From Oopsacas minuta (taxonomy: Eukaryota > Animalia > Porifera), in assembly GCA_024704765.1 (NCBI GenBank), contig JAKMXF010000311.1:1-64000 (forward strand): 64,000 nucleotides of DNA. The letters are read 5' to 3'. The position numbers and the translations under genes are program-made. Each line of letters begins with the position of its first letter. Position 1 is the first letter of the stretch. This document shows positions 23,852 to 63,055 of this stretch, in pieces. The notes under the pieces were generated by a model, which was given only the letters and a program-made list of their open reading frames with translations, searched no databases and was not told the DNA's origin.

Positions 23852-24005
23852 GTAAGTGTTTTATTCTTACAGTAAGTATGTATACGTTGCCGCACGAACA
23901 CCTATATACACGGTCGTGACACTCTCATATCAAGTCAAGATTCGTATAGGCCTTATTTGATAGAGTGAAAAACAACTTGCTTAAGATGGGGGTATTCAAT
24001 AAGGG

Positions 24006-26088: not shown

Positions 26089-26196
26089 GTAATTCATTCT
26101 GATAAACTTTTTCAAACTAATTTACTAAGTTTACAAATCAATAAACTTCTCCAATTTTGCATCAATGATTATTATGACGTATACAATTTATCTTAG

Positions 26197-27433: not shown

Positions 27434-27824
27434 GTGTGATGTCTACTAGGAAGATTTATCCATATCTCATCGTTTTTGGTTGGGTGTTTCCACTAGTTAT
27501 CCCAATCATAACCATTATCATTACACATTCATACTACGTAAACGAGGTAGAACATTGCTTTCTCAATAATGATAGAGGAGTCATTTGGGCATTCATCGCT
27601 CCAATACTAATTATATTGATTGTCAACGTTGTCTTCCTTGTAATAGCCATTACAAAGATTATATATACAAAATGGTCTAACCAAAATAATGACCATAAAA
27701 TTATTATGAAAGATGCACTCATCACAGCTTTAATATTAACTCCTGTTTTGGGAATTCCTTGGCTCTTCCTACTCCTTAACATTTCAATCCAACACATAGC
27801 ACTCCAGTATATATTCATCTTTTT
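27434..27824 (+). CDS. Adhesion GPCR exon: TM4-TM7, truncated at the N join at 27825
   Basis: YLIVFGWVFP, HCFLN, WAFIAP and PVLGIPWL family motifs; phase matches the previous exon. Confidence 0.9.
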
Positions 27825-33966: not shown

Positions 33967-35601
33967 ATGTCCGGTGTGAGTTCATCAAAATTTAAGCACA
34001 GAGAAAAGGAAAATATAACAATATCACAGAAGGGAGATACTGAACAAATAGTGCAACGTCCCATACAGCAAACAGGGCCTTTGCTTATGCGAAGGTCGCT
34101 AGTAGAGAAAGAACAGCGTCTGTCTATACTGAGTTCGCTAGTAGGGAAAGAACAGCGTTTGTCTATACCGAGTTCGCTAGTAGGGAAAGAACAGCGTTTG
34201 TCTATACCGAGTTCGCTAGTAGAGAAAGAACAGCGTTTGTCTATACCGAGTTCGCTAGTAGGGAAAGAACAGCGTTTGTCTATACCGAGTTCGCTAGTAG
34301 GGAAAGAACAGCGTTTGTCTATACAGAGTTCTCTAGTAGAGCAAGAACAAAAAAGTTTGCTTTTAGAACTAACACAAAGATTGAGAGTACAGCCTATGCA
34401 ACCTGACTCTACTAACAGTACAACTTCTGCAGTAGCTGAACCTATACAGCAAACAGGGCGTTTGCCTATACGAAGGTCGCTAGTAGAGAAAGAACAGCGT
34501 TCTTCTATACCCAATTCGTTAGCACTGCAAGAACAGCGTTCTTCTATACCCAATTCGTTAGCACTGCAAGAACAGCGTTCTTCTATACGAAGGTCGCTAG
34601 TACAGCAAGAACAGCGTTCTTCTATACCCAATTCGCTAGCACTGCAAGAACAGCGTTATTCTATACGAAGGTCTCTAGTACAGCAAGAACAGCGTTCTTC
34701 TATACCCAATTCGCTAGTACAGCAAGAACAGCGTTTTCCTAAACCGAATTCGCTAGTAGGACAAGAACAAAATTTGCATTTACAACTAACACAAAGATTG
34801 AGAGTACAGCATAACCAACCTTACTCTACTAGAAGACTCGAGTTGATGGACAGTGACATCACTGACATTACCTCTCAGCCCAAACCTAAGGAAGAATGTT
34901 GCGTATGTTTAGAGAAGAATGCAGTAACAATGAAATGTGGGCATAATATATGTTCAGAATGCATAATAAAACATGCTTGGCATCAGATGAAATTAATCAA
35001 GCATGAAATCAGCTGTGCCATGTGTTCAGAAAAGATAGATCTCGATTATTTGATTAGGTGTGGACTAATTGACGCTGAAGTATACAGAACACTTACTCAG
35101 GCTCTTTCAAACAATAACTGCAAAAACAAGGACATGCAAAAGTGTCCATCATGTAATATCTACTGTCAGCGTGAAAATGGGAATCAAAATCTAATCAATT
35201 GTCGTATTTGCTCAAAGAATGATGTGTTATCTCAATTCTGCTGGAAATGTTCCCGGGTTTGGAAAAATCATGGAAGTTTACAAAATTGCGGAAATGTGAA
35301 ATGTGGAGATAATAACTTAGATCATATGCTAAATCCACCTATGAAGAACTTTGGTTCTCTCAGATCCCCCAAATATAGAGCTTGTCCTAAGTGCTTTACC
35401 TTCATAGATCATGAGAGTGGGTGTAATGCGATGACATGCACAAGGTGTTCAAACATATTCTGCTTTATTTGTCTTAGAAATTTTACTGATAGAGTGAGGT
35501 GCAGTACTACATCCTACAATGGTTATTTTAACTGTTTGCCAGCACCTATACAGGAAAATCTTGAAGCTAAATTCCTTCAATATGATACTAATAATAAATA
35601 A
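33967..35601 (+). CDS. RBR (RING1-IBR-RING2) E3 ubiquitin ligase; N-terminal repeat extension uncertain (alternative start ATG 34846)
   Basis: CCVC..CGHNICSEC..CAMC; CPSC..CRIC..FCWKC; CPKC..SGCNAMTCTRC..FCFIC, with the catalytic Cys in GCxxM. Confidence 0.88.
   Translation: MSGVSSSKFKHREKENITISQKGDTEQIVQRPIQQTGPLLMRRSLVEKEQRLSILSSLVGKEQRLSIPSSLVGKEQRLSIPSSLVEKEQRLSIPSSLVGKEQRLSIPSSLVGKEQRLSIQSSLVEQEQKSLLLELTQRLRVQPMQPDSTNSTTSAVAEPIQQTGRLPIRRSLVEKEQRSSIPNSLALQEQRSSIPNSLALQEQRSSIRRSLVQQEQRSSIPNSLALQEQRYSIRRSLVQQEQRSSIPNSLVQQEQRFPKPNSLVGQEQNLHLQLTQRLRVQHNQPYSTRRLELMDSDITDITSQPKPKEECCVCLEKNAVTMKCGHNICSECIIKHAWHQMKLIKHEISCAMCSEKIDLDYLIRCGLIDAEVYRTLTQALSNNNCKNKDMQKCPSCNIYCQRENGNQNLINCRICSKNDVLSQFCWKCSRVWKNHGSLQNCGNVKCGDNNLDHMLNPPMKNFGSLRSPKYRACPKCFTFIDHESGCNAMTCTRCSNIFCFICLRNFTDRVRCSTTSYNGYFNCLPAPIQENLEAKFLQYDTNNK
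34099..34770 (+). repeat. Two blocks of 39-bp tandem repeats (6+ and 7+ units) within a ~381-bp higher-order duplication
   Basis: Units start at 34099+39n and 34480+39n; the two blocks share flanks (PIQQTG.. / LTQRLRVQ). Confidence 0.95.
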
Positions 35602-36993: not shown

Positions 36994-39900
36994 TTAAGTT
37001 TTGGGCGTCAATAAGTTCAAAATTTGTTCAAGTTTACCCTCCAAATTATCAATTCTAGCTTCTAAGGTTGTATTCTGTTTAACTGACTTTTCAATATTTT
37101 GACCCATAACATTAATTCTATCTTGAATCCATTCATGACTAATGATACCACGCAATTTCTCATCTTCAAGGAGTTTAATGTTCCTTTTCAGACGAGTATG
37201 ATTCTCTTCAATTTGAAGATCTGTATCTTTCCTAGGGCTGCTTTCCTTCAGAAATTTCCATTTAGAAGGTTGGATAGTTAGTTCTTCAATTGAAGTAAAC
37301 ATGCGAAGCTTTCTACCAAAAAAGAAAGCGAGATTTGATTTGAATTCTAGTGACACGACTAACTCTATCTTGTAGTGGAATCCACTTATTTTAATTATCT
37401 CTCCATAAGTTTCAGACAGCTGTGCGATCAATATATTTAACATAACGACAATGATTGTGAATGCAAATGCCAGATAGAGTAAAGAGAATAGAAAATTTGA
37501 ATCTAGGACTGTGCTCTCCTCATTTCCCGGTCCACCATCAAGAAGAAATATTATTCCGGTCAGCAAAGGTCTTCTTAAATCATATAATATTGTACGATCT
37601 GTATCAAACCAGAATAAATTTGAAATGGTTTCATTCGAGCAAGTTAATCCTGTTGCCAATGAAACAGCTGTACCGGACTCTACAATATTTAGCCTAGCTG
37701 CTAAATGTATTCCTCCAAAATATGCCAACAGGAAAATGCAGATGATAATCCCGAATTGTGTTATATCATAGAGGAATATGTGAACGATGGTACGCACATA
37801 TGCGCCGAGAGATGGATAAATACGAGTGTATTTGAAGAGTTTTAGACTGAAGAGAATGAATGTAAATGAAGCGAATGCCCATTGAGCAGGCACCACTGAA
37901 AGCCTCAGTACTATTAGAATGAATAGAGATATCAAGGCACACACATCAATCATATTCAATACACCTATGTAACTACTGAGTGCCGAAAAGAAATGAAAAA
38001 GCAAGCGATCATATGCTCTAAGATGTTCAGAAAAATGAAATATTTTGCGAAATTCATATAGTTTACCAGTGCCCTGTCCAGCATCACCAAACGTTTGATC
38101 TTCTCTAGCTTTTTCAATAAACTTCTTTTCTATATGAATCTGATACCATTCCAAAGCGAATTCTAAAATCTCATCAAATGTAAAAAATATAGCATAAATG
38201 ATAACTATAACCTCGCAAAAAGCCCTCCCCTTGCTGAGGTTATCACTATAACTCAATAACATGTCGTCACACAGATAAGAAGCCTGTATCAGAGCGTAGA
38301 AGAGATTGATTAGAAAGAAACAGTAGAGAATGAATGTTAACACATACCACCAACGATAGAAACGAAGCTTCTCTCTCACTACAATACTAACTAATGGATG
38401 ATACTTTACTAACGGATCAGGACAGTCAAGCAGTTTGTGAAGGAAAGAAGGCTCGAAGCGATCGTAGAGAGGATCATCAGGGTAAGAGTGTTCCAACGAG
38501 GAAACAGAGTCAAGGAACTTGGGAGTCAACGTGACGTCAAGATATTTCTCAGACACAGAGTCATCCATGAGTGCAGTGAGAGCATCGAATAAATTCTTCT
38601 CAATCAATTGATGATAGATGATAGGATGTTGGATGAAATAATCATATTGTATGTGTTTGAAGAATTCAATTAACACAGCTTCATTAGCCTCATCCACTGC
38701 TCTATCCACTGGTGTACGACCTCGTGCATCTTTCTCCTCCAACAGTAGCTTTGGTATCTGATCCATGTAATTATCAGTTAAGTACTGTAGTAGGAACTCT
38801 GCACACCTGACAGCACCTTCACTGGCTATCGCATGTAGAAGTGTGTTCCCATACACGTCTCTTTTAGTGAAACTAATCCCGTAACTAAGCAGTAGTGGCA
38901 GAAGAGTAGAAGCATCATTAGCTACAGCCAGTTGTGCTGGTGTAGCTCCAGCTGCTGTCTTATCATCTGGATTAGCTCCATTCTCCAGTAGAATTTGTAG
39001 TGCTTGTCTCTGTTTGCTAAGGATAGCCACATGAATTGGTCTCTGATGGTCATGACTGTATACTGATTCCACAGCACTGACTCCATGCTGTAGCAGTAGT
39101 TTGATTATAGAGATGTGTCCTCCTTCTATGGCAATGCAGAGTGGCTTCTTTTTAGTATCTCCCTTCCAATCGTAGATGTTAGCATTGCACCCACATTCAT
39201 CTAACAGGAATCTAGTAAATAGGATATGAGTGAGAATCAATTTGGAAATGAGCTATTTGATATTTGAGTATGTATATAGTAGAAATAATAGAATTCAAAA
39301 CAAATCAAGTTATATTTTCACACAAGGAAATAGTCTAAATGAACAATTTGATTTTCAGATCATTATTTGCTCGCTAATCTATATGATGTTCTACTTTTCC
39401 TATATCAAATGATAACCCCCCATAAACTTACTTGGTGACATCATAGTTCCCTCCAAACACAGCTGAATATAGAATACTTTTGGAGGTATCTGTTCTATCA
39501 GTACTTGCTCCGTACTTAACCAGTTCCCTCACCAGACCAATTCTTCCGTGTTGAGCTGCGTAATTCAGAGGACACAATCGTGACTCCGTAAGCAACAGAT
39601 TTGGATCTGCTTTTGCCTCTAACAGAGCTGTACCTATCTGATGGTAGCCTCGATGTGCTACGATACACAGTGGAGTGAATCCTGATGAGTTTTCTGTGTC
39701 TATAGGTACTTCTTTCTCAATCAAGTATTTTGCTAGATTTGGTCTGTTCTGGTCACAGGCGAAGTGTAGCATGGAACCATAGTCTTCATGACAAGATTCA
39801 TTCAACACATCAACTCCAGGTAACAGTAACTGTATGTGAATGAATTAAGTTTGTAATATTATTTGGATGATTGGTAAAATTGAAATTATTCTAAACACTT

Positions 39901-44183: not shown

Positions 44184-44963
44184 GAGTGTGTAATATATTT
44201 CATGTATTTAAATACATTGGCAAGTCTCACCGATTTATTGTGAGGCTCAAGTATTTGAACACACTCTCACTTTCATTTTAAGCTGGTTGCTAAATTCATA
44301 ATATCCCTATCCTAATATCAGTGAAGAAATAATAGGGGGTTGAGGCGGACTTGAACTAGGGAGGGTTCTTGCATATTGAGGAGGGGATACTCCGTTTATA
44401 AATAAATTTTACATATCATTATGGACAGAGCATTATAGGAGGGGATACTCCGTTTATGATTCAGGAGCGGGAGGAGAGCGGCGCTCAATTTATGAAGGAA
44501 CTGTCACACTGGAGCGTGTAGCTGTAATTGCAACCAATTTATCAATTTCATTAGTACTTTGATTAAATTCAATATTGATGCTTGAAAAAGTGGTTGTTGG
44601 GAGACTTTTTCATAATTTATATCAAAATATGTAATTAGATATACGTATTCGTTGAATCAGGATTGACGTTACACATTTAGCAATGTCAGAATTACAATAG
44701 TAAAATTAAATTCTGTATAAATATAATAAAAATCTACTAGTCTATATCTGGAAAGGTGCGCAATTGGAGCGGGAATGTTTGAGATCGAAACTCAACAAAT
44801 GAGCTATTTACTTCACAAATGAATGCAAAAATTGTGGTGCATGAGATGAAGTTGACATCTTGAATTAATCTAGGAATAAAAGACATGCAAATGATACATG
44901 TGTAATTCAAAAGGAATTGCTAAAATACCTAATTATAGCTCTATATATACTCTTATTAGATAT

Positions 44964-47900
44964 ATGGCAATGAGTAAAAAATACTCGCAATTCAAAGGTA
45001 AAGATTTGCCTCATGAATCACTAAATTATGACGTTTATAAACCCACTTTACTTCCAAATTCATCCAAAGATAATGAGCTTCAATCTTTGCTAGTCCATTT
45101 AGAGCTTGGGAAAGAGAAGGTTGATTATATATTGGAAAATGGCCACAAGTTCATTGACAAACCTAAGGTCTTAGCAAGAAAAGTGGATATTGGAATAGCA
45201 AAGGCCGAGATGATAACAGACGCGCTTAGAAATTCCAATCGCAAAAATATTGATAGTTTAACGGATGAAATGTCTAAAAAAATTCAGGAATGTATGAAAG
45301 ATAATCCTGATATGTTAAATGCTTCTGATATTGCTTTACTTACTGATATTGAAGAAGAATTAGTTGCAGCATATTTAGAATCGAAACCACTCAATGAAGG
45401 CCAAAAAAGAACAATCTCAGAGTTATATAAAAGCGACTTCTCTGTTCCTGATATCCATGATAGTCTAGGTATATCAATGGAAAAAATTCAAGACCACTTG
45501 GACAATACAATGTTAGTTTTCGCTGGAAGAGAAGGAAAGAAAGTTTTGAAAATAATATTCAAATATACAAAGAAGGTTCCGACTACGAAATTAATAGACA
45601 ATATTAGAAATAATGATCTGAAGCTACAAGATCAGCTGGTTTGTAAGTTGCGTAGAAAGAATGAACACGAATACCAGGAAATATTTCACTACTTAAAAAA
45701 GTTTAAAGAGACAGAAAATTTCTGTCAAATTAACACACATCTTACCATTGATGATATAATTTATATAAATGAAAGTAGTCTTGATGTTGAACAACTCAGC
45801 ATAAAATTTAACAAAGTCGAGACAGTCATAAGAGATGTTTTAGAAAGTTATAAGCCTCACGAATTAGAGGAGAGGCATTATAAAAATTTACAACTCCAGA
45901 GAATTGAAAATATAATTATATTGTTCGGAAGAGAAACCAAAGCATTTCTCGCATATAGGATGATAATTTCAGATTCAATTGAAAGCATGATTCTCAGAGC
46001 AGAGAGTATAAAACGTAACGATCCAATGAAAGTATTTGAAGAACTATTACCTCTCACATTTTATTACCTCAAGTGCAGCCTACCCTTTGATGATATCACA
46101 AGAATTATTGCTAAAACGTGTAGAATTACGCTGACAACACATGAAATATTCCACATAATTTTCCAACTATCTGATCCCATTTTGAAGGGTTTTTGCATTG
46201 AACATTATTCTTTCAGTAATCCTGTTCCCCTTTATTACCCCAAATTCCCAACATACATACATCATAAGGGAATCAAAAATAGAATTCGAAATTTGCAGCG
46301 AATTGTGGTATTCAATCCAAACTTATCATGGTTTGATTTCATTTGGTATAGGTCGAGCGGGTTGGAATCCTATTGGTAAGTCACACTTATTAGATCTCAT
46401 TTTTGAGACAGATTTCGAGAGAGGGAATCCACGAAAAAGCGCATTCCATTTGAATTCAATAGATATCCAAATGACAAAGAATCTATTCGCTAAGGTTGAG
46501 GATAGACATCCTAAAGAAGCTACAAAATTGGCCTATATTGATTGCCATGGATACTCGGACATGTCTGTCATTCATACTATCTGTCAATATTTGGATGTAG
46601 CATTAATTCATGTGAGTCATTTTGATTTTATCAATCATAAGGGAAAGATCATGGAGGATATACAGAGATTCGATTACATTAATGTGTGTACATATTTATC
46701 CGAGATTATGAGGGAGAAGATGTAATATTGCGAAAAGAGAAAAGAAGGACATACATTTACATTCCCAACTTAGTGAAAATAGACAACACAATTTTCTACT
46801 CTAAATTAAAAAGCATTGGCTTCGATATTTTGCACTTCAAATCTAGAGAAATTGGATCAGAATTCATTGAAAATTTAATGAACGTTTTCAAATCTAAGAA
46901 TTTAAAAGGAATACAATCAGACAACAAACAAATACAAAACATGATGAGGCTAATTATGGAAAATATTAAATCTCTTGAAAATTTAGATTTTTCCTTCTTA
47001 AACTATTATCCACCTTTCATTGACTATATGAATTCATTCTATTTAAAATTTAATGAAACGGATAGAGAGATTATCTGTAAACATAATGCAAAGTGCGTAA
47101 ATCTAAAATATCAACTCGATAATATTAAAATGGGAGAAATTGTTCAGTGCTTTAACAACATCTTAGAAAAGAAGAACTCTGTGCTTATTTTGTGGAAACT
47201 ATCACAAGAACTTTCTGTCCTAACAAGTCAGATTATCTCTTGTCGCGAGGGATTAATTTCGAAACCGGGTAAAAAAAGCATGAAGTATAGAAACGACAAA
47301 TACAACCTAGAAATCATATGGAGAGAAGCGTTGTTATCTCAAAAATATGGTGAGAAAAGTAAGTGTAAAATTCAAGCAAAATATAGAGAGAAATTCACAG
47401 AAAACTTTAGCAATTTCGTTGAAAGAGGAGAAGCATTCGAGCTAATTGATGGTGATAATCTCAGATATTTTAATCAAGATATCAATGCTCTATTATCCAA
47501 GCTATACATAAAGCAAGAAGAAGAGCTCAAAGTAATAAATAAACATTTCAAGAAAATTAAAATGAGACAAGCTCCCATTGTATTGAGCATATTTGGACCA
47601 CAAAGTTCAGGGAAGTCAACATTGTTGAACTACTGCTTTGGTTGTAAATTCCTAACCAGTGCTGGGAGATGTACTAGAGGGATTTACGGATCTCTTGCAA
47701 AACTCAGCCGACCTGTTAATTGCACTAATCAGTTCTTAATCCTTGACACTGAAGGTCTGGATGCAATTGAGAGAGGAGAAGAGACAGATGCTTCGTTAGT
47801 TCACTTTGACAGAACTATGGTGTTATTCTGCTTAGCTGTGTCACAAGTTGTGATTATAAATGTAAAGGGTGATATTGGCAAAGAATTGCAAAACCTATTA

Positions 47901-50900
47901 CAGATATGCGCATACTCCCTTCACAAACTCAAAGTAAGCAAAGTAGTTGCTCCAAAGATATTCTTCGTTCTCAATCAACAAGCGGATCCAGATACCACAA
48001 AACATCTAAGTGCTATCAACACATTAATGGATAAACTGAATAAGGAATCAGACTTGATGGAAATTGAAGGAATAAGAATTTCAGACCTAATACAAGTATC
48101 TAGGGATAATCTATTCATTCTTCCGTCAGCATTTAATTCACAACAAATGAATAAACCAGCAGCCAATCTATTCAACTCAAGTGTCGTTAAGCAGTCGCCA
48201 ACCAATACATTTGCCATTCGCTGTGCAGAACTGAGACTTGCAATAATCGATGAACTGATTAAATTGCCACAAGATGAGAGGGCACCTTTCAAAACGATGA
48301 GTGAGTGGATGGAAATGTCTGGAGTTATCTGGGATATAATAGTCAAATATCAAGACATCGTTAAATTCAGAAACATTGAAGAACTGATGTGTAACAATAT
48401 GCTGGGTAAGATAGTCACTGACTTAATGAAGAAATACATGTCTGCAAATCGATCCAAATTTGTCGACATAACAGAACAATTGATCTTGGAGATTAAAGAA
48501 ATTAAGAAACTTTTCCGTCAAGCAAATGTCCTGGAAGATTCCATGCTTAAGTTTGATCAAATATTTGGCGAGTTTCAGGAGGCAAGCTTCAAAGAATATG
48601 AAACGATTTGTCAAAACGACAAATTACTAAATAAAATGAACCACATTTGTGAAGCAGAAAAATCAAATCTCTCAAGACTAATGTACATAGAAAGAAAACA
48701 TTACAAAGATAAACTCCAAAGGAGTATCAAAGCTTCTTGGACTAATCTCAAGCTACCTGAAATCATGGGTAATTTTCAATCTGAAATCGAAAACAATGTT
48801 GACAAATATATGGAGTTCAGTGTTAAGGAATTGGAAAAGGAATTTGAAGAGATATGGCTGAAATGTTTTGAAAATGAAGATAAAGAAGAAAAGAATGAGC
48901 GAGATGAGGATTTTGATAATCTATATTCGATTTTTAAGATGGAATCCAAAACAATGGAAAACAAACAAACTATCTTTGAACTTTTCGAAGAATCAAACTT
49001 TGAAATGGACACAGTCATAAAAGACCTCCGAAAAGATATGTTATCCAGACTAGAGAATTATGTAGATTCATTTTCAGCAGAAGAAGATTTCATTTTTCCA
49101 TGGAAAGACAATCCTATACCGATAAAAGACATGGTTCCCTTCACCGGAAGAGAGAAGTGTGAATATTTGAGTAAAGAGTCACTATATACGATGGAAAAAC
49201 GTAGGTACATCGGTTTGCACCCAGTACCAAAAATCAATAAATGGATCCCTGAAGATTGCCATGGTGTTATCCAGTATTGTTCAGGTTATTATAACCATGC
49301 AGACATTACATGGAAAATAGAAGAAAGGAAACAAATTCTTCGGTTATCTTCAGTCTTGAAAGATCCAGATAATCATAAAGTTAGCACATGGTCAAAGTTA
49401 CTTTATACCATATCTTCAGATATTGAGAGTCTGCTTAAGGAAGATCCACAAATTCCAAAAGCTACTGTCAGAGAAATTATTCATTATTTGTGTTTACATT
49501 CAAACTTGTCAATTATGAGATCAATTACATCCTAGCAAAATTGACTAACAAAGCAGAAAGGACGACAACAACTTTTGCTTTTGCATATGCCTTCAAACAT
49601 TTATTGGAAACAAAAAGATACAGTAAAGATGAGTATGATGCAGAAAAAAATTTTAAGAAATTGGAATTACTTGATTTTTTCTTGAAAAAAGTTGAAAGCA
49701 GAAAATTGGCTAGAGGCAACTGGGATCGCCCAAAAATGAGAGAGATTGATCGGATTTTCTCCAATCGATTTGCTCTAGATTTCTTAAAAAGTGTTAGGCA
49801 AGGGGTCATAGATGACCAAGATGAATTCATTGAAAGCGAATTCTTGCATAGAAAAGTCAATTTATCACACAAATCTATGTTACTCTTAATGGAAGATATA
49901 ATATCAAAGGAAATCAATTTGCACCCTAAAAAGGAGGTTCTAGATCTAAATAATAATGTTGTACAATTCATCTGTAATCGTAATGAAATGACCAAGAAAA
50001 TATTTAGAACTCGATGGGAAGAAGTAGCAGAGGAAGTCTATGTCGAAATTGTTAGACACACTAAAATAATTTTCTCAGAACAGCTCAGTGGAATTAAAAA
50101 AGTCATTTCTAACCTTTTGGACAATTTGTCAAAAAACTCTGATGAAAGATTAGGATTCGATTCAGACAGTAACTTCGAAGTCTCAGATGAAACAGATAGA
50201 AAGAAGTTTACTGATACTGAAATTAAAGAGAGTCCGTGTAGAGCAATGGTACTTTATTTGGAGAAGTATTTTGATTCAAAACTGACTAAAGAAGATCTTT
50301 TTACGTATTTCAACCATGACTTTAGCATCAAAGGTGTTAAGATGATTAAAATCCAAAAACATTGGGTATTATGCGATAAATCTGATGACGATACTCTTGC
50401 ACTTGAGGAACATATTTTTAACAAATTAACAAATACCAAAATGTTCAACCACACAGAAAAATTATTCAACATCTACGGGTACTTGAAAGAATTTCTGTCT
50501 ACTTTGAATTGCTTCGAATATGAGCTATCGAAGATTCAATTTGGAGAGTTTGAACTGGTAAAAAAGCTTAAAGACGAATATGAAGCATCCGCCTTGAGTT
50601 GTCCAGAGAAATGTCCTAGTTGTGGAAAACTCTGTGAGAGGGAACTTCATCCACATAGTGGGAAATGCCGAATAAAAACAGGTCATCAAATTTGTTCAAT
50701 GGGTGGAAAGGTTTGGAAAAATGATGAAAATCGATCTGCTATTCTATATACTTGCGATGATTACAAAGATTCGACCGAAGTGAAAATACCCGGAAAGAAA
50801 ATGAATTGGGGTGAATTTAAAGAGCAGAGTGGAAACGAATGGGATTGGACCCTACCAACAGATAAAGATTATACAATCTTACAACAAAATAATCGTGAAA

Positions 50901-51682
50901 AAATGAAAAACATTTGGAACAAATTTGGCAAAGGGATACTAAAATATCACGCGAATAGAGGTACACAAATTGAATTCATACCTTATACCTCTCTTGAGGA
51001 AGTTTTAAAAGCATTTCAAACATTTAAATTTCGTATTTGCTTCGTTATTGATGGAACCGCATCTATGCATAGCGATATTGACAAGGCAAGAGTTTCCGTA
51101 GGACAGCTAATCAGCAAGTACAGAACACAGGGCCATGGTGCTATGTTTTCAATTGTGATTTATCGAGACCATTGTGACGGTGGTAATCTAATTCAAAAGT
51201 TTCCGGTTGAATTGGAATTTACGAACAACCATGAGAGTGTGCAAACATTTCTTCAAGGCGTAAGGGTGTTTGGTGGAGGAGACGGTCCAGAGGCCGTGTT
51301 AGACGGACTAGCTACAGCTGTTAAAGGATGTAACTGGGATGGTAAATCAGGTACTAGAAATATAATTATTCACATATTTGACGCTCCCCCATATGGAGAT
51401 TTCCCCAATTATAAATCACATAGTAATGGCAGTGATAAAGGGAACTGTTGTTGTTGTAACCACGGTGGGTTATGTAAATTTGATTGGAAGAAAGATGTCT
51501 GGGATAAAATGCGGAAGGCTAACATTGAATATTATGGTATAAGCACTGGAAGTCAGTTTCCTCATTTCGAAAAGACAATGGAAGATAATTTGGGCAGGCT
51601 TTTTCGAGATGTGCAGGCAGTGGAAAAAGAGATGGTTAATGAGGCTGTGGTACAGATCTTCATCGATTACATAGTACCGTAG
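44964..51682 (+). CDS. Very large inducible GTPase (GVIN/VLIG-like) with HTH-like N-terminus, degenerate GTPase-like domain, Cys/His module and C-terminal vWA; ~2,240 aa if three frameshifts are corrected (pseudogene or assembly error)
   Basis: G1 GPQSSGKS (47595-47618), G2 SAGRCTRG, G3 DTEG; earlier GIGRAGWNPIGKS/DCHG; CPEKCPSCGKLC (50600); vWA DGTASM/YRDH/GGGDGPE/FDAPP. Four overlapping ORFs abut at microrepeats. Confidence 0.85.
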
Positions 51683-54852: not shown

Positions 54853-56169
54853 TTAGATATCGATGAAGAAATACACGTAAACAATAGATAATAGGTAATT
54901 GGTGGCGAATATTAAGAAGGTGAAAAATCCGCCAATTTTGTGAAGCAAGTAGAAAAACAAAAAGATAACAAATAAGCAACTAATAGTAGTAAAAATATAA
55001 ATGAAGGTAATAGAGAATTCCTTATGGACTGTAAACATCATCCCCATAAGTGAGTAGTATACGTTCCCCCAACCGAACCCATATGACAACGCAAATAAAG
55101 CAATATTGAATATTGGCCAAAATGCTAATGTATCGCATAATTGTGAGTATTCTGAATTACAGTGTAGATAGTGCTCAGAAACTAAATAATAGAATGCCAT
55201 AGAGATGTGAGAAATAGCCTGGAAAATAGATGCTGTTATCATCAGCCATTTCAACTTACAATAATTCATAATTAGAATACACACGATTGATCCAATAATC
55301 AAGAATATTGGATAGAAGAGAGATGCTACCTTAGGATCCATTGCTTGTTGATTCTCTAGAATATGAGAAGAGAATGATACCATAGCCTCATGACCTCCTA
55401 ACTCTTTCAGAGAGGCTAATACAGACAATATGATAATAGGTTTCAATACTTTCCAGTCTTTCAATGCTCTGAAACTTTCACTCCAACTAATTTTACTACT
55501 CAGTGTCTTCTCCTTAATCTTCTGTATTTCAGTATCTGCATCAAACTCACTACCATGTAAATACAAGAGAGTTGATTTAGCTTTATCATCCAAACCTTGT
55601 TGCACATACCATACAGGTGAAAGAGGATTTATGATCATCGAAAGACAATACATACATACTTGAAATAATCCAAACACTGCAAACCATCTGAAAGACAGCC
55701 AAATTCCTGCGGAATATACCATGAACAATCCTATTCTAATGCTGAATCCGAATCCTCCATTCATAACCTTTCTCTGATTATCCAAACTTACCTCAGTAAT
55801 ATAGGTCATTCCGACTATCATAGCAATCCCTGTTTGATACCCTACTAGTGCGACACCTATAATCACATACACAGCTGAATTTGCTATGACTATCAGCATA
55901 TACCCTGTTACACCAATCACACAACATAGTGTAACTAGCAACTTTTGATTAAAACCAAATTGAACAAGAATAGGGGCAGAAATTTCGGCCACCAGTCTTG
56001 TGAAAAATGAAATTGACGCAAATGTTGGCAAAGTCTGGTAATTCAGAATATTTTGTTCCAATAACTGTTTTTGATTTGGAGAAGTGATTCCAAGTGAAAA
56101 TGCTAGTGTCAATGCACCTAAATAGCATGAAAATACTGCAAAATAAGTCGGAATCTCCTGGAAGTTCAT
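54853..56169 (-). CDS. MFS sugar-porter family transporter (GLUT8/Tret1-like), intronless, 438 aa
   Basis: SLGITSP, YITEV..QR, PLSPVW (PESP-like), GFGWG; multiple TM segments. Confidence 0.85.
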   Translation of the reverse strand: MNFQEIPTYFAVFSCYLGALTLAFSLGITSPNQKQLLEQNILNYQTLPTFASISFFTRLVAEISAPILVQFGFNQKLLVTLCCVIGVTGYMLIVIANSAVYVIIGVALVGYQTGIAMIVGMTYITEVSLDNQRKVMNGGFGFSIRIGLFMVYSAGIWLSFRWFAVFGLFQVCMYCLSMIINPLSPVWYVQQGLDDKAKSTLLYLHGSEFDADTEIQKIKEKTLSSKISWSESFRALKDWKVLKPIIILSVLASLKELGGHEAMVSFSSHILENQQAMDPKVASLFYPIFLIIGSIVCILIMNYCKLKWLMITASIFQAISHISMAFYYLVSEHYLHCNSEYSQLCDTLAFWPIFNIALFALSYGFGWGNVYYSLMGMMFTVHKEFSITFIYIFTTISCLFVIFLFFYLLHKIGGFFTFLIFATNYLLSIVYVYFFIDI

Positions 56170-56395
56170 AATTATGTTACCAATAGGGATAATTATGTGT
56201 ATTTATCAACGTTAAATATACGTAGTTTGCCAAAGGCATATTTGAAACCGGGCAAGCACATCTACACAAGGGTAGGAAATTCATTTTTACAGCCATAAAT
56301 AATCTTCAGGTTTATTACAATATTTACATGCTTCCCCTAAATATGTATCTTTCGTGATAAATCTTATAGATTATCATTATAAACAATTGGGGCTT

Positions 56396-56779
56396 TCACG
56401 AAATATTTGGTTAGTGTTGTTTTTGGTCGGCAGGACCAATATTTCAGCCATTTCGGTCCTGTGATAATATATACCACTATCTATACGCTTGTTTGTTTGG
56501 TCCCTTTTCTGGGTTCACATGCATAATAACTATTTTAAATGTGTGATTACCTCGACACTCCGTTTACCAGGTTTATAATATGTATGAATAATTATTCAAT
56601 AAACATTCTAAATTTGGTAATATAGCTGGGAGAAATTAGGGAAAATTATTATTCTGATCACCTAAAATATATGTATTACCATATATAATGCATTAGCCAT
56701 TAGTATTATCGCCGGACCGAGATAGTTGAAATATTAGGTCCGACCGGACTAAAAACAACACGGACAAAATATTTCGTGA
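56396..56779. mobile_element. MITE with ~75-bp imperfect TIRs
   Basis: TCACGAAATATTT..GTGTTGTTTTT..GGACC.ATATTTCA..TCGGTCC has an inverse copy at 56704-56779. Confidence 0.8.
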
Positions 56780-57794
56780 CACGCGTCGCATAAACTTAGA
56801 TGAAACTCAGCCCTGGTATAAGAATATTTAGCAATGAAAGATTCGTTCAAATCTTGGATATTGTTTATTCTTAGATCTTTGGGAATTAGTTTGGGAGATT
56901 GTTATAATTTAGGCGGACCAGGAGATGGATAATAGAATTCAACTTTTGGCTTGTCTTATGACAAGGAGATCAACCTCTGCCCAAAAATGAATGACCAGAT
57001 AAACGGATAAGGCTTATATTAGTGAGAATACATCAGTGGTGCAAACAAAGTGTGTTTAGCACGTCATTTACCGCTTATATGCTGTCAATTGACTCACGTA
57101 TCATATTTAGGTAATTTCATAATCTATATTTAGGAATTATTGCAAGTATACGTTTATTGTGGGCAAGGTATGATTCGATTCATCGGGCTTGAACAATATT
57201 GAAAATTTTGGAAATTCCGATATCTGAGGAAAATATCGATATAGGAAATTTAATGAGATGGAAGAGAGCAAGATTGTCTATGGTGAATCAGGCAATCACT
57301 GACAAATTCTCAGAAAGTCAATTGTGTAATGTACGTACGTAAGGAATCTCCTTGTCGAATATGAACACGTAGATTCAAGGAGAATATGTGAGAAAATTAC
57401 TGGTGACGAATTATGAATTGGGTATGACGAGCCCTGTCAGAGGAAATACATAAGGTTTGGGTACTAAAAGGAGATGCATCTCGACTAAATTCAAGGCAAT
57501 ACTTCAGAGACCAGAAGTTTCTATATTCAATTCATTCGATACAAAAGATCCAGTTTCCCAGATTATAACCCCAATAGAAAAAAGAATCACTGGAGAAATT
57601 TGAAGAAGAGAAGTCCTAAATCACGACAAAGACCCACTAAAAGAGGCCCCACTTTGAGAAGTTCCAATGTATCACCTAATACAGAACCCTATAGCTTTTA
57701 GAAGTCAAATATATATATTTTTTGATTGTCAGCATTAATAAGGGATACAAAAGTTGTCTGAACAATTATGAGGAAATTGAAATAACAACAGGTA

Positions 57795-59111
57795 TTATAT
57801 ATTGAAGAAGAAATATACCAATACAATAGCTATTAAGTAATTACAGGAAAATATTAGAAAAGTTGCAAATCCACCAATATTGTGAAGTAAATAGAAAAAT
57901 ATCATAACAACTATGTATGCAGAAAAGTTGGCGATCATGTCTGTTATAGCAGTAAAGAGTTCCCTGTGTATAGTAAACATTATGCCAACCAACGCGAAGT
58001 ATACAAGTCCCCATCCAAATCCGAATGAAAATGAAAACAGTGCTATGTTAAATATGGGCCAAAATGCTAGTGTATGACATAATTGTGAGTATTCTGTATT
58101 ACAGTGTAGATAGTGCTCAGAAACTAAATAATAGATTGCCATAGAGATGTGAGAAATAGCCTGGAAAATAGATGCTGTTATCATCAGCCATTTCAACTTA
58201 CAATAATTCATAATTAGAATACACACGATTGATCCAATAATCAAGAATATTGGATAGAAGAGAGATGCTACTTTAGGATCCATTGCTTGTTGATTCTCTA
58301 GAATATGAGAAGAGAATGATACCATAGCCTCATGACCTCCTAACTCTTTCAGAGAGGCAATTACAGCCATCAAAATCATTGGTTTTAATACTTTCCATTC
58401 TTTTAAGATCCTGAAACTTTCAATCCAACTAATTTTACTACTCAGTGTCTTCCCCTTAATCTTCTGTATTTCAGTATCTGCATCAAACTCACTACCATGT
58501 AAATACAAGAGAGTTGATTTAGCTTTATCATCCAAACCTTGTTGCACATACCATACAGGTGAAAGAGGATTTATGATCATCGAAAGACAATACATACATA
58601 CTTGAAATAATCCAAACACTGCAAACCATCTGAAAGGCAGCCAAATTCCTGTGAAATATGCTATGAACAAACCTAATCTAACGCTGAATCCGATTCCCCC
58701 ACTCATGACCTTTCTCTGATTATCCAAAGTTACCTCTGCAATATATATAAATACGAACATCGCAACAATCCCTGTATAATACCCCACTAGAGCGACACCT
58801 ATGATTACGTACGCAGCTGAATTTGCTATGACTATCAACACATACCCTGCTATACCAAGTACACTACTTATTACGGCTTGCAATTTTAGATTGAAACCAA
58901 GTTGAACTAGAAGAGATGCAGAACTCAAACCTAATATTCTTGTGATATGTGATATTGAAGCGAATATTGGTAAAGTTTGATAATCTAGAATATTTTCATC
59001 GATTAGTTGTTTTTGAGTTGGAGAAGGAAATCCTACAATAAATATAATAGTTGTTGTTCCTATGTAACTTGAAAAAACTGCAATGTATGTAGGCAAATTG
59101 CTTAGATTCAT
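57795..59111 (-). CDS. MFS sugar-porter family transporter paralog, intronless, 438 aa
   Basis: Same length and motifs as 54853-56169. Confidence 0.85.
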   Translation of the reverse strand: MNLSNLPTYIAVFSSYIGTTTIIFIVGFPSPTQKQLIDENILDYQTLPIFASISHITRILGLSSASLLVQLGFNLKLQAVISSVLGIAGYVLIVIANSAAYVIIGVALVGYYTGIVAMFVFIYIAEVTLDNQRKVMSGGIGFSVRLGLFIAYFTGIWLPFRWFAVFGLFQVCMYCLSMIINPLSPVWYVQQGLDDKAKSTLLYLHGSEFDADTEIQKIKGKTLSSKISWIESFRILKEWKVLKPMILMAVIASLKELGGHEAMVSFSSHILENQQAMDPKVASLFYPIFLIIGSIVCILIMNYCKLKWLMITASIFQAISHISMAIYYLVSEHYLHCNTEYSQLCHTLAFWPIFNIALFSFSFGFGWGLVYFALVGIMFTIHRELFTAITDMIANFSAYIVVMIFFYLLHNIGGFATFLIFSCNYLIAIVLVYFFFNI

Positions 59112-61433: not shown

Positions 61434-63029
61434 TTATACTTTCTTCTTTTTGCTACTTGAAGAGCCATCAGTATCTTCTGTTACCTGATTTATGGAAAAT
61501 AAATCCACTTCATTTCCAGAATGTTGGCGTTTGAGAATGCTACGACAACAAGAGCTACAAATATCACAACAATCATTTGAAGGGTTCGATACAACAGGTA
61601 GTTCTTCGTCAAGATTTGCGAGAAGTTGTTTCCTCCTACATTCATTAGAAGTAAGAAAGCTTTGAACTTTCTTAACCAGATTTGAGCAATGTTGGATGTA
61701 TGCTGGACTCTGTTTACGTGTTTTGGAAACTAATATTCGGTTAATTAAGCGAAAATCACTGCTTCTATAAAAAATAATACATCTACTGGGAGAACAGTCT
61801 CTACCAGCACGTCCAGCTTCCTGCATGTAACTTTCCAAGTCTTTGGGAGCTCCGTAATGGATAATTATCCTGACGTCAGGTTTATCTATGCCCATGCCAA
61901 AAGCAACGGTCGCTACAATGCATTCAATTTCACCACGCACGAATTTATCGTAAGTTTCTTTTCGATCTCTATCATTCATACCAGCATGATAACTATCGCA
62001 TTTCACTCCTAGATTCTTTAAATGTTTACAATAATACTCAGTGAGATCACGAGTGAGACAATACACAATACAAGGACCCCCAAAACTATATTTTTCTGGA
62101 AGAGATGGTGAGTTCGCATTGCGAAGCAGCTTTTTCATATCATGATCAATGCCTTGCTTGTTATGCACTTCAAAATACAGATTAGGCCGATTGAGTTTTA
62201 TTCTATGTAGCTTTGTATTCTTTAAAGAAAGAGATTGAATGATGTCTTTAGTTACAAAATTACCAGCTGTAGCTGTAAGGGCTAAAAACGGTACATCTGA
62301 GAGCCATTCACGAAGCAGTGACAACCTACCATACTTCGGACGAAAATCATGCCCCCAACATGAAACACAATGTGCTTCATCTATTGCTACTAAACATATG
62401 CGTACTTTACTATGTAGATCTAGTATAAATTCTTGTCCTCTGTTTATACAAAGTTCTGGCGTAATATACGCAATGTTAAATTCACTATTAAATAATCGTG
62501 CTAATGTTTTACCAGATTTAATACTAGTAGGAGAAAGTATCACAGCAGATATTCCTGATTCGGTCATGAGACGGAATTGGTCCAACATTAAAGATTTCAA
62601 TGGACTAATTACCAAAGCTAGAGAATTAGTATAGACTGGTACGAATTGATAGCATATACTTTTACCAAATCCACTTGGGGCTATAAAGAATTGATCGATA
62701 ATTTTAGAAGGATCCCTACTACTGTTAAGGTAATCTAGGATTACACTGATAATCTTCCATTGTTTTGCTCTAAATTCGTTGTGATTAAATTTTGACTTGA
62801 GAACTTCAAGATGAGATTGATTTGGGGGAAAATGGGGGGGACTTGGTTGAGTTGTTTGGTTTGGCAAGCAAGCTGTTTGAGTGGTAACTTGACAATTATC
62901 CGCTTCAGTAGTTAGTGATAGTTGCGGGATATTCTCACAGTCTATATTATCATAATCTGATTCACTACCTAAAACATCATCTTCGTAATATACATCAGGG
63001 CTTGATAATATCTCATCATCATCATCCAT
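61434..63029 (-). CDS. RecQ-family (WRN-like) helicase: helicase core plus Zn-binding region only, acidic N-terminus, C-terminal KKKKV
   Basis: APSGFGKS, DEAHCVSCWGHDFRP, TATA, YHAGM, ATVAFGMGIDKPDVR, HYGAPKDLESYMQEAGRAGRD, CRR..CCDIC. Confidence 0.92.
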   Translation of the reverse strand: MDDDDEILSSPDVYYEDDVLGSESDYDNIDCENIPQLSLTTEADNCQVTTQTACLPNQTTQPSPPHFPPNQSHLEVLKSKFNHNEFRAKQWKIISVILDYLNSSRDPSKIIDQFFIAPSGFGKSICYQFVPVYTNSLALVISPLKSLMLDQFRLMTESGISAVILSPTSIKSGKTLARLFNSEFNIAYITPELCINRGQEFILDLHSKVRICLVAIDEAHCVSCWGHDFRPKYGRLSLLREWLSDVPFLALTATAGNFVTKDIIQSLSLKNTKLHRIKLNRPNLYFEVHNKQGIDHDMKKLLRNANSPSLPEKYSFGGPCIVYCLTRDLTEYYCKHLKNLGVKCDSYHAGMNDRDRKETYDKFVRGEIECIVATVAFGMGIDKPDVRIIIHYGAPKDLESYMQEAGRAGRDCSPSRCIIFYRSSDFRLINRILVSKTRKQSPAYIQHCSNLVKKVQSFLTSNECRRKQLLANLDEELPVVSNPSNDCCDICSSCCRSILKRQHSGNEVDLFSINQVTEDTDGSSSSKKKKV

Positions 63030-63055
63030 TACCAACTATTCAAATAAGTTATTAA

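What the first reader, a model, noticed from the sequence alone, without database searches (positions are those of the whole stretch)
44964..51682. Giant HTH-like / degenerate GTPase / VLIG GTPase / Zn / vWA protein: candidate new immune GTPase architecture
Seen: four abutting ORFs form one ~2,240-aa frame. It has HTH-like segments (e.g. LNEGQKRTISELYKSDFSVPDIHDSLGISMEKIQDHL, ~45390-45500), a degenerate P-loop (GIGRAGWNPIGKS 46345-46383, DCHG), a canonical VLIG G domain, a CxxxCPxCxxxC..H module and a terminal vWA of the DxTxSM/GGGDxPE/DAPP class. Established: GVIN/VLIG proteins are dynamin/GBP-related GTPases linked to innate immunity, and this vWA class occurs in hemicentin/VWA7 and Dictyostelium VwkA. 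Inference: a metal-dependent vWA ligand-binding module fused to a giant GTPase, with possible nucleic-acid-binding HTHs, could be a one-chain sensor-effector. I do not recognise this architecture among vertebrate GVINs.
Basis: partly seen in the sequence, partly recalled or inferred. Interest (0 to 1): 0.75.

Follow-up and report, generated by a model that had tools for sequence, protein, structure and literature searches.

The report
Glass-sponge giant VLIG GTPase with vWA tail
This is one intact, intronless 2,260-residue gene of the glass sponge Oopsacas minuta. It belongs to a little-known branch of the interferon-type "very large GTPase" family that adds a helix-turn-helix array at the front and a metal-binding vWA domain at the end; its apparent breaks are assembly errors.

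Summary
The four ORFs (44898-51682, +) are one gene. They lie in three reading frames, but short-read contigs from the same sample differ from the assembly at exactly the three frame switches: 4 nt fewer at 46251, +A after 46680, +T after 49492. Applying these gives one open frame of 2,260 aa.

The genome is Oopsacas minuta (Hexactinellida). It has about 9 paralogous loci, three with intact 2,206-2,260-aa single ORFs in the assembly. One is already in GenBank as "Interferon-induced very large GTPase 1".

Anatomy:
- An acidic array of HTH-fold units.
It keeps GxxxxGKS, DCHG and RD, and matches the URGCP N-terminal domain in shape.
- LG2, a canonical VLIG G domain.
- A helical stalk.
- A Cys/His module, which canonical sponge and fish VLIGs also carry.
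- A hemicentin-type VWA_4 domain with its MIDAS motif conserved.

None of the 120 best canonical VLIGs carries the vWA. Distant proteins combining a VLIG-type P-loop, Cys/His module and vWA exist in Tetrahymena and in environmental contigs.

Verdict: a new variant of a known kind. An immune role is inferred, and nucleic-acid binding by the HTH array is doubtful. The scan's first readers noted eight similar findings elsewhere in this genome, apparently paralogues.

The parts
44898..51682 (+). Whole gene. One intronless ORF of 2,260 codons once three assembly indels are corrected. The likely start is M1 (44898) or M23 (44964); relatives do not share the first ~50 residues.
46251..46254 (+). Assembly error 1. 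Four extra bases in an ACAT repeat, absent from the read contigs of X1, X2 and X3. It causes the frame 0 to 1 switch.
46680..46681 (+). Assembly error 2. One A is missing (AA in the assembly, AAA in contigs of X2 and X3; the X1 contig agrees with the assembly). It causes the frame 1 to 0 switch.
49492..49493 (+). Assembly error 3. One T is missing in a T run (X1, X2, X3; X4 has a C two bases further on). It causes the frame 0 to 2 switch.
45075..46052 (+). N-terminal array of diverged three-helix HTH-fold units (aa 60-385). Net charge is -7.
   Evidence: AF2 pLDDT 86. The fold search gave HTH domains at Z 5.5-7.3. Pfam UPF0122 7.6e-5. PDB profile hits to GerE, Sleeping Beauty PAI and response-regulator HTH domains. 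Charge.
46215..46820 (+). LG1, the first large-GTPase domain (aa ~440-640). It spans assembly errors 1 and 2. G1 GWNPIGKS lies at 46345-46383, G3 is DCHG, and the RD motif is invariant.
   Evidence: Family motif counts. AF2 of the paralogue's equivalent region, pLDDT 80. Foldseek: Sey1p 6.7e-6, then GBP5/2, atlastin-1, GBP1 and RNF112. Atlas: PF25496/PF25683 clusters at TM 0.61-0.71.
46821..47552 (+). Helical linker between LG1 and LG2 (aa 641-884).
   Evidence: AF2 secondary structure
47553..48470 (+). LG2, the canonical VLIG-type G domain (aa 885-1190). G1 GPQSSGKST (47595-47621), T925 and DTEG are invariant in 63 sequences; the NQQAD motif is nearly so (N and the first Q invariant, the other three positions in 60-61 of 63).
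   Evidence: Pfam PF25683 4.5e-26 and RHD3_GTPase 1.5e-16. Motif counts. 26-27% identity over ~350-440 aa to canonical O. minuta VLIGs.
48471..50599 (+). Stalk of about 700 aa with no Pfam match, presumed helical. It contains assembly error 3. Not modelled here.
50600..50695 (+). Cys/His metal-binding module, C-x3-C-P-x-C-x3-C-x4-H-x5-C-x5-H-x2-C. All eight ligand positions are kept in at least 45 of 47 sequences.
   Evidence: The same module occurs in canonical VLIGs.
51035..51679 (+). C-terminal vWA domain, VWA_4 (hemicentin-like) class. Motifs are the MIDAS-type D-G-T-x-S, GGGDxPEA and DAPP(H/Y)G, followed by a conserved CCCC-N-H cluster.
   Evidence: Pfam PF25106 8.6e-10. Column counts. 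UniRef name of a paralogue fragment.

Best explanation
The locus is an intact, single-exon gene of the glass sponge Oopsacas minuta. It encodes a 2,260-aa soluble protein of the VLIG/GVIN/URGCP branch of the dynamin-GBP superfamily.

Its core is the family's usual chassis: a first LG domain (equivalent to the URGCP N-terminal domain, here still carrying GKS, DxxG and RD), a helical linker, a fully canonical VLIG G domain, a long stalk and a Cys/His metal module. Two peripheral modules are added: an N-terminal array of diverged HTH-fold units, and a C-terminal hemicentin-type vWA domain with a conserved MIDAS motif.

Inferred mechanism, by analogy with GBP1 and human GVIN1 coatomers: GTP-dependent dimerisation through the LG domains drives assembly on a target. 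The more variable HTH array and the vWA domain act as target- or partner-binding modules. The MIDAS would coordinate an acidic side chain of a ligand, as the C-terminal MIDAS domain of the giant AAA+ protein midasin does. The most likely setting is cell-autonomous defence.

Shown here: gene integrity, domain identities, motif conservation, family size and distribution. Inferred: GTPase activity, oligomerisation, ligand binding and the immune role.
For: Gene integrity:
- Read contigs restore the frame at all three switches.
- Three paralogues have uninterrupted ORFs of 2,206-2,260 aa from the first Met (open frames 2,215-2,275).

VLIG membership:
- PF25683 scores 91.9 bits against a cut-off of 55.
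- There is 26-27% identity over 350-440 aa to canonical O. minuta VLIGs, which themselves score 1e-113 on PF25683.
- The P-loop has the shared GxQSSGKS form.
- The LG1+linker model is closest to PF25496/PF25683 clusters, TM 0.61-0.71 over 375-450 residues. It also matches Sey1p, GBP and atlastin at Foldseek E 7e-6 to 1e-4.
- The Cys/His module is shared with canonical sponge and fish VLIGs.

Added modules:
- HTH fold.
- vWA with conserved MIDAS residues: D45, T47 and S46 of 47 sequences, plus GGGDxPEA and DAPPHG.

Soluble protein:
- No TM-like segment.

Pattern typical of a defence family:
- About 9 loci in this genome.
- More than 140 proteins at 90% clustering, from at least 3 further assemblies, with tandem pairs.
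- LG1, LG2 and the Cys/His module are most conserved. The HTH array, part of the stalk and the vWA vary most.

Functional precedent:
- Human GVIN1 forms a coat on cytosolic Burkholderia and is predicted to have two LG domains.
Against: - There is no expression or functional data. No listed run is on record as RNA.
- One read data set (X1) agrees with the assembly at 46680, so a frameshifted allele at that site is not strictly excluded.
- The G domain also passes the RHD3/Sey1 Pfam threshold (61 bits against 42.4), and the best Foldseek match of LG1 is Sey1p. A membrane-remodelling role cannot be ruled out from sequence.
- The HTH array is acidic, so nucleic-acid sensing is unlikely for most units.
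- Sequence profiles did not link LG1 to LG2 or to PF25496. hhalign found only the P-loop (probability 26%) or nothing. The LG1 = URGCP-domain equivalence therefore rests on predicted structures.
- The C-terminal 370 residues were not modelled.
Confidence: 0.6

Rival explanations
1. This copy is a decaying pseudogene of the family. The frameshifts are real, and only the paralogues are functional.
For: The assembly shows three frame switches. Other loci (C144, C312, C321:772k) are also broken in the assembly. The X1 contig keeps the assembly's state at 46680.
Against: Contigs of two or three other runs of the same sample carry the frame-restoring state at every switch. All three sites are short repeats or homopolymers, which are typical long-read errors. 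The corrected frame has no stop in 2,260 codons, and all catalytic, Cys/His and MIDAS motifs are intact.
Confidence: 0.07
2. It is a housekeeping membrane- or organelle-remodelling GTPase of the atlastin/Sey1/RHD3 kind, not a defence protein.
For: RHD3_GTPase passes its Pfam cut-off, at 61 bits against 42.4. Sey1p and atlastin are among the best structural matches of LG1.
Against: There is no transmembrane or amphipathic anchor. PF25683 scores higher than RHD3_GTPase. The Cys/His module and the URGCP-like LG1 tie it to VLIGs. A multi-copy, fast-diverging family with tandem duplicates is unusual for a housekeeping fusogen.
Confidence: 0.12
3. It is a nucleic-acid sensor. The HTH array binds foreign DNA or RNA and thereby triggers the GTPase.
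For: The HTH fold is supported. ENA paralogues score strongly on DNA-binding HTH families: HTH_23 3e-13, GerE 6e-12. One unit (aa 150-196 of the array) is strongly basic, at +10. Zalpha domains appear among the structural matches at Z about 6.
Against: The array is net acidic in the window copy (-7) and on family average (-6.2). The two best-matching units carry -7 and -4. The fold-search Z values are below the level the tool regards as specific for small helical domains. No binding data exist.
Confidence: 0.15

Closest known systems
Canonical VLIG/GVIN/URGCP GTPases (mouse VLIG-1/Gvin1, human GVIN1, teleost and O. minuta 'interferon-induced very large GTPase 1-like', about 1,600-2,700 aa)
   Same: - A VLIG-type G domain with a GxQSSGKS P-loop (PF25683).
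- A preceding LG-like domain. Atlas clusters carrying PF25496 are the closest shapes to LG1+linker.
- A helical stalk.
- A C-terminal C-x3-C-P-x-C-x3-C..H module.
- A giant single ORF and a multi-copy family.
- Human GVIN1 is likewise predicted to have two LG domains.
   Different: - Only 26-27% identical in the G domain. Canonical O. minuta copies are 40-47% identical to fish VLIGs.
- PF25496, PF26772, PF25974 and PF26773 are not detected by sequence.
- LG1 keeps GKS/DxxG/RD, whereas the equivalent position in the three canonical O. minuta copies reads ..SQKS.. / LNLRG.
- It adds an N-terminal HTH array and a C-terminal VWA_4. None of the 120 best canonical relatives has VWA_4.
GBP1/GBP5, atlastin-1 and Sey1p (dynamin-superfamily large GTPases with solved structures)
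   Same: The LG fold followed by a helical middle domain (Foldseek E 7e-6 to 1e-4, probability 1.00). An RD-type G4 motif in LG1, as in GBPs (from my own knowledge of GBP motifs).
   Different: Sequence identity is only about 10-14%. This protein has two LG domains in tandem, no isoprenylation box or TM anchor, and the extra HTH, Cys/His and vWA modules.
Distant proteins combining a VLIG-type P-loop, Cys/His module(s) and a vWA, in Tetrahymena malaccensis (KAL4484497.1, 2,261 aa) and environmental contigs (P0174, P0194, P0233, P0235, P0236)
   Same: Domain order: GxQSxGKS P-loop (none was found by the pattern in P0236), one to three Cys/His modules, then a C-terminal VWA_4 with D-x-T-x-S. P0174, P0236, P0194 and P0233 match the sponge family profile colinearly. 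P0235 rests on Pfam hits only. The Tetrahymena protein has no GTPase Pfam or profile match, only the P-loop pattern.
   Different: No HTH array by Pfam. LG1 is weak or absent. Identity is low. Their organisms are unknown or dubious (one is filed under a 'Candidatus Pacebacteria' MAG on an 8.8-kb contig).
Midasin/Rea1 (giant AAA+ NTPase with a C-terminal MIDAS/vWA domain). An analogy only, from my own knowledge.
   Same: The design logic: a very large NTPase motor with a C-terminal MIDAS domain that docks onto a partner through metal coordination of an acidic residue.
   Different: An unrelated NTPase class (AAA+ against dynamin-like) and no sequence relationship. Not tested here.

Membership tests
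VLIG/GVIN/URGCP very large GTPases | A VLIG-type G domain (Pfam PF25683 URGCP_GTPase) above the curated threshold | tested here: met
   91.9 bits against a cut-off of 55, E 4.5e-26 for the window piece, and 90.4 bits for paralogue P0001. Only profile positions ~131-346 of 396 are covered.
VLIG/GVIN/URGCP very large GTPases | Canonical G1-G3 motifs with the family's GxQSSGKS P-loop | tested here: met
   GPQSSGKST, T925 and DTEG are invariant in 63 sequences. The same P-loop form occurs in canonical O. minuta and fish VLIGs.
VLIG/GVIN/URGCP very large GTPases | An N-terminal URGCP domain (PF25496), i.e. a first LG-like domain ahead of the G domain | tested here: inconclusive
   There is no Pfam hit, and hhalign against three canonical copies found nothing. 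The AF2 model of LG1+linker is closest to Atlas clusters carrying PF25496+PF25683, at TM 0.61-0.71 over 375-450 residues.
VLIG/GVIN/URGCP very large GTPases | A C-terminal Cys/His module C-x3-C-P-x-C-x3-C..H. This is my operational feature, taken from canonical members seen here. | tested here: met
   Present and conserved in at least 45 of 47 family sequences. Also present in canonical O. minuta P0271 and Pimephales P0272.
VLIG/GVIN/URGCP very large GTPases | Induction by interferon or infection, and GTP hydrolysis | not testable with these tools
   No run on record as RNA was found. Sponges have no known interferon. Biochemistry is needed.
vWA domains of the VWA_4 (hemicentin-1-like) class | Pfam PF25106 above threshold, with a MIDAS motif | tested here: met
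   38.9 bits against a cut-off of 27. D-G-T-x-S, GGGDxPEA and DAPP(H/Y)G are conserved. UniRef names a paralogue fragment 'Hemicentin-1-like vWA'. The fold itself was not modelled.
HTH DNA-binding domains | A three-helix HTH fold | tested here: met
   AF2 pLDDT 86. Units 61-105 and 105-147 superpose on Tc3, IstA, resolvase, AsnC and sigma-4 HTH domains at rmsd 1.2-2.2 A over 41-49 residues, Z 5.5-7.3. Pfam UPF0122 scores 23.3 bits against a cut-off of 22.7. Hits are strong in P0039. The Z values are below the tool's specificity guide.
HTH DNA-binding domains | A basic surface compatible with nucleic-acid binding | tested here: not met
   The array has net charge -7 (family mean -6.2). The best HTH units carry -7 and -4, and only one unit is basic, at +10. 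This is a charge count only, not a surface calculation.
Atlastin/Sey1/RHD3 fusogens | C-terminal transmembrane hairpin | tested here: not met
   No hydrophobic 19-mer lies outside the G-domain core strand. The maximum Kyte-Doolittle value is 1.78, inside LG2.

The most novel reading that the evidence does not exclude
VLIG-type GTPases fused to a Cys/His module and a MIDAS vWA domain form an ancient, undescribed eukaryotic lineage. It is found in ciliates, unknown protists or giant viruses, and glass sponges. It would be the older form from which animal VLIG/GVIN proteins lost the vWA. In sponges it works as a one-chain sensor-effector: ligand capture by the vWA and/or the HTH array licenses GTP-driven coat assembly on microbes or viruses.
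Probability: 0.15. Interest if true: 0.7.

Novelty: new variant of a known kind. Interest (0 to 1): 0.45.

Why it matters
VLIG/GVIN proteins are the least understood of the interferon-inducible GTPase families. Human GVIN1 was shown only recently to build an antibacterial coat.

Glass sponges carry both canonical VLIGs and an expanded sister clade with added HTH and vWA modules. Related vWA-bearing forms occur in a ciliate and in environmental eukaryote-like or virus-like contigs. Together these push the family's origin well before vertebrate interferon.

The clade also offers natural domain fusions that hint at what such GTPases dock onto. The MIDAS motif gives a clean, mutable handle for testing ligand binding.

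Practically, the result shows that this public assembly and its gene models break these genes at indel errors. Copy-number or 'pseudogene' statements for this family in O. minuta need read-level checking.

Tried and rejected
- **Introns at the frame switches:** rejected. The ORFs overlap, the paralogues are uninterrupted, and read contigs restore the frame.
- **Sequence search of the whole paralogue against PDB chains:** no hit.
- **Profile searches of LG1+linker and Cys/His+vWA against PDB sequences:** nothing useful, only collagen VI vWA at 8e-4.
- **Best PDB profile hit of the HTH array (8vd6):** it is a de novo designed repeat protein, so not biologically informative.
- **Foldseek of the whole HTH array:** no significant match. 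The VIA wide search was needed.
- **hhalign of LG1 against LG2 and against the canonical URGCP domain:** only the P-loop, or nothing.
- **Repeat-unit HMMs within the HTH array:** only sporadic cross-hits, so the units are strongly diverged.
- **ESM Atlas feature search with the C-terminus:** only generic VWA_4 clusters at 0.77.
- **Literature searches** for VLIG + von Willebrand, VLIG + sponge, and VLIG-1 + exon found nothing relevant. The O. minuta genome paper does not mention GTPases or interferon.
- **Rfam and tRNA scans of the window:** empty.
Full report
**What is at the locus**

The + strand between 44898 and 51682 carries four long ORFs that abut or overlap: 44898-46379, 46198-46725, 46686-49535 and 49490-51682. 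They are not in one frame. They run in frames 0, 1, 0 and 2.

A search of the window's own genome found about nine related loci (61.5 Mb, 365 contigs, window = contig C311). Three of them hold a single uninterrupted frame of 2,215-2,275 codons. A tblastn with the closest intact paralogue (C49, 2,206 aa) covers its residues 19-2204 in order. The frame switches fall near 46228-46262, 46680-46686 and 49490-49496. So the four ORFs are one gene that is colinear with intact paralogues.

**The frameshifts are assembly errors**

Four public runs from one sample hold this stretch. I laid their Logan contigs on 46100-49700. The contigs differ from the assembly by indels at four places, and these make up exactly the three frame switches:

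| Place | Change in the read contigs | Runs | Sequence context |
|---|---|---|---|
| 46251 | 4 nt absent | X1, X2, X3 | ACAT repeat |
| after 46680 | extra A | X2, X3 | AA becomes AAA |
| after 49492 | extra T | X1, X2, X3 | T run |
| after 49494 | extra C | X4 | same T run |

Applying the first three changes in a script gives a frame of 6,783 nt with its only stop at the end, which is 2,260 codons. One data set (X1) keeps the assembly's state at 46680. A frameshifted allele at that site therefore cannot be excluded outright. The simplest reading is long-read indel error at short repeats.

It follows that other 'broken' paralogues in this assembly (C144, C312, C321:772k) may be artefacts as well. 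Public gene models are fragments. The 648-aa P0121 is this window's last ORF. KAI6650326.1 (870 aa) comes from contig C312 and appears to be a piece of its copy.

**Organism and family**

The intact paralogues are in GenBank under Oopsacas minuta, a glass sponge (Hexactinellida). P0001 is named 'Interferon-induced very large GTPase 1' and P0016 'P-loop containing nucleoside triphosphate hydrolase'. That paper does not mention GTPases or interferon.

The word-index search found 143 relatives at E <= 0.001. The 120 listed have E = 0 and 42-61% identity. Nearly all are unnamed ENA proteins, and most carry PF25683 plus PF25106. Three that I looked up come from three different assemblies. Two of them sit next to a second family member.

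**Domain anatomy**

I aligned 62 full-length relatives with the corrected window protein.

1. **HTH array, residues ~60-385.**
   - This is an array of short three-helix units. AF2 on a 46-sequence alignment, with the window's own sequence first, gave pLDDT 86 and an all-helical model.
   - Foldseek found nothing significant for the whole array.
   - An exhaustive structural search placed units 61-105 and 105-147 on HTH DNA-binding domains: Tc3 and IstA transposases, serine recombinases, GcrA, AsnC/Lrp, sigma region 4 and Zalpha. These matched at Z 5.5-7.3 and rmsd 1.2-2.2 A over 41-49 residues.
   - The tool warns that such Z values are not specific for small helical domains. The sequence evidence agrees, however. 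Pfam UPF0122 is just above its cut-off in the window copy. HTH_23 (3e-13), GerE (6e-12) and others hit an ENA paralogue with a longer array. Profile hits to GerE, response-regulator and Sleeping Beauty HTH domains appear in the PDB.
   - The array is net acidic: -7 here, family mean -6.2. The two best units carry -7 and -4, and only one unit is basic at +10. The fold is HTH, but general nucleic-acid binding is doubtful.

   - This is one of the most conserved parts of the protein. GKS, the G3 aspartate and an RD motif are invariant in 63 sequences. The first P-loop glycine is G in 28 and S in 34. The G3 glycine is kept in 37.
   - The window copy has the full G-x4-GKS, DCHG and RD.
   - AF2 of the paralogue's equivalent region plus linker gave pLDDT 80 and pTM 0.79. 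It matches Sey1p, GBP5/2, atlastin-1, GBP1 and RNF112 at Foldseek E 7e-6 to 1e-4.
   - In the ESM Atlas its nearest shapes are clusters carrying PF25496 (URGCP domain) and PF25683, from rotifers and chordates, at TM 0.61-0.71 over 375-450 residues.
   - LG1 is therefore the counterpart of the domain that precedes the G domain in canonical VLIG/URGCP proteins. Human GVIN1 is likewise predicted to contain two LG domains separated by a helical linker (10.1101/2025.03.24.645074).
   - Sequence profiles alone did not show this relationship.

3. **LG2, residues 885-1190.**
   - This is the canonical VLIG G domain. It scores 91.9 bits on PF25683 against a cut-off of 55, and also passes RHD3_GTPase.
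   - GPQSSGKST, T925 and DTEG are invariant. In NQQAD, the N and first Q are invariant and the other three positions are kept in 60-61 of 63.
   - It is 26-27% identical over 350-440 residues to O. minuta's canonical 1,640-aa VLIGs. Those score 1e-113 on PF25683, carry PF25496 and have no vWA.

4. **Stalk of ~700 residues.** It has no Pfam match. I could not model it.

5. **Cys/His module, 50600-50695.**
   - The pattern is C-x3-C-P-x-C-x3-C-x4-H-x5-C-x5-H-x2-C. All eight ligand positions are kept in at least 45 of 47 sequences.
   - It is not special to this clade. Canonical O. minuta VLIGs and a fathead-minnow VLIG have the same C-x3-C-P-F-C-x3-C..H module near their C-termini.

6. **C-terminal vWA, from 51035.**
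   - It belongs to the VWA_4 class (PF25106, 8.6e-10). D-G-T-x-S, GGGDxPEA and DAPP(H/Y)G are conserved, and a conserved CCCC-N-H cluster follows.
   - I did not test the VwkA/VWA7 comparison directly.

There is no transmembrane-like segment.

**How widespread is the fusion**

Among the 120 best relatives of a canonical O. minuta VLIG (of 3,874 hits), none carries PF25106. These include O. minuta, many teleosts, birds and the octocoral Xenia.

An exhaustive profile search with the Cys/His+vWA region against 1.84 billion representatives found 39 proteins at E <= 1e-30, which are the sponge clade and its fragments. It found thousands of generic vWA proteins below that.

Among the weaker hits are giant proteins that repeat the same order: a VLIG-type P-loop (GxQSxGKS; none matched this pattern in P0236), one to three copies of the Cys/His module, and a C-terminal VWA_4 with D-x-T-x-S.

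| Protein | Length | Source |
|---|---|---|
| P0174 | 1,724 aa | filed under a 'Candidatus Pacebacteria' MAG on an 8.8-kb contig; probably misbinned |
| P0194 | 2,084 aa | Logan contig |
| P0233 | 1,574 aa | Logan contig |
| P0235 | 1,971 aa | 84.6-kb metagenome scaffold, densely packed with unannotated genes |
| P0236 | 1,807 aa | ENA |
| KAL4484497.1 | 2,261 aa | Tetrahymena malaccensis |

Four of them (P0174, P0194, P0233, P0236) match the sponge family profile colinearly over LG2 and the C-terminal region. P0235 rests on Pfam hits to URGCP_GTPase and VWA_4. The Tetrahymena protein has no GTPase hit by Pfam or by the family profile; its place in this list rests on the P-loop and Cys/His patterns plus VWA_4. 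None shows an HTH array by Pfam.

The GTPase-Cys/His-vWA combination is therefore older and wider than glass sponges. The HTH array looks like a sponge-clade addition. I found no paper describing any of this.

**Mechanism**

What is shown is anatomy, conservation and family dynamics. The rest is inference from GBP1 and GVIN1 biology.

- The two LG domains would provide nucleotide-dependent dimerisation and higher-order assembly.
- The stalk would transmit the conformational change.
- The more variable peripheral modules would bind targets or partners. In the 50-residue bins, mean top-residue frequency is 0.48-0.57 for most of the HTH array and 0.53-0.64 for the vWA, against 0.69-0.77 at the LG1 core (aa 401-550) and 0.83-0.89 at the LG2 core (aa 901-1050).
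- A MIDAS vWA at the end of a giant NTPase recalls midasin, where the MIDAS docks onto a partner's acidic residue. This is my own knowledge and an analogy only.

Multi-copy, tandemly duplicated and fast-diverging families of this kind are typical of defence genes, but no expression or challenge data exist here.

Rivals:
- a real pseudogene (about 0.07);
- a housekeeping atlastin/Sey1-like remodelling GTPase (about 0.12), weakened by the lack of an anchor and by the VLIG-specific features;

**Verdict**

It belongs to the VLIG/GVIN/URGCP family as a divergent sister clade. The tandem GTPase domains and the Cys/His module are family features, not novelties. The HTH array and the vWA tail are genuine, undescribed additions.

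The proteins are already in public databases, one of them named. The scan's first readers noted eight similar findings, apparently paralogues, elsewhere in this genome (unverified notes, not used as evidence). I rate it a new variant of a known kind, of moderate interest.

Noticed in passing
window 27857-29188 (+): A 443-aa ORF that is a stand-alone paralogue of only the Cys/His module + VWA_4 part. It is 42% identical to aa 1849-2257 of the giant gene (Pfam VWA_4 6.6e-15). It has a 10-residue internal duplication in the Cys/His module and an acidic Ser/Asp tail. Homology begins right after an upstream stop, and an N lies just upstream. Whether it is a gene fragment or a separate short gene is unresolved.
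   Followed up: partly
window 46251, 46680, 49492; other loci G000:C144:738778-741408, C312:220653-223478, C321:772521-775233: The public O. minuta assembly has indel errors at short repeats and homopolymers. Paralogues that look broken elsewhere may be intact too, and GenBank models of this family are fragments (e.g. KAI6650326.1, 870 aa).
   Followed up: partly
L027 (ENA ERZ19025686, scaffold_17, 84.6 kb), gene at 3864-9779: A 1,971-aa protein with a VLIG-type P-loop, Cys/His modules and a vWA. It sits on a metagenome scaffold densely packed with short, mostly unannotated genes on both strands (plus a DSPc phosphatase and an LRR protein). The scaffold looks like a giant virus or a compact protist genome.
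   Followed up: no
L024/L025 (GCA_031291965.1 and GCA_003202625.1), gene at about 385-5559: A 1,724-aa URGCP_GTPase+GBP+VWA_4 protein is filed in GenBank under a 'Candidatus Pacebacteria' MAG, on an 8.8-kb contig with one other gene of unknown function. It is probably a misbinned eukaryotic or viral contig.
   Followed up: no
L022 (ENA ERZ25071281), genes at 10001-17881 and 19832-27751: Two family members in tandem (2,626 and 2,639 aa). The first has an expanded N-terminal HTH array with strong Pfam HTH hits, so the length of the array varies between paralogues.
   Followed up: partly
window 46300-49700, run X4: Contigs of run X4 are short (about 200-500 nt), very deep (400-1600x) and only 95-99% identical, with dozens of substitutions. 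They may come from other individuals or alleles, a close paralogue, or RNA. The library kind is not on record.
   Followed up: no
window 29-4636, 33967-35601, 36994-39240 (-), 54853-59111 (-), 61434-63035 (-): Neighbouring genes: two ankyrin-repeat ORFs, an RBR (RING-IBR) E3 ligase, an ankyrin + ion-transport (TRP-like) channel, two tandem sugar transporters and a RecQ-type helicase. There is no obvious functional link to the GTPase.
   Followed up: no
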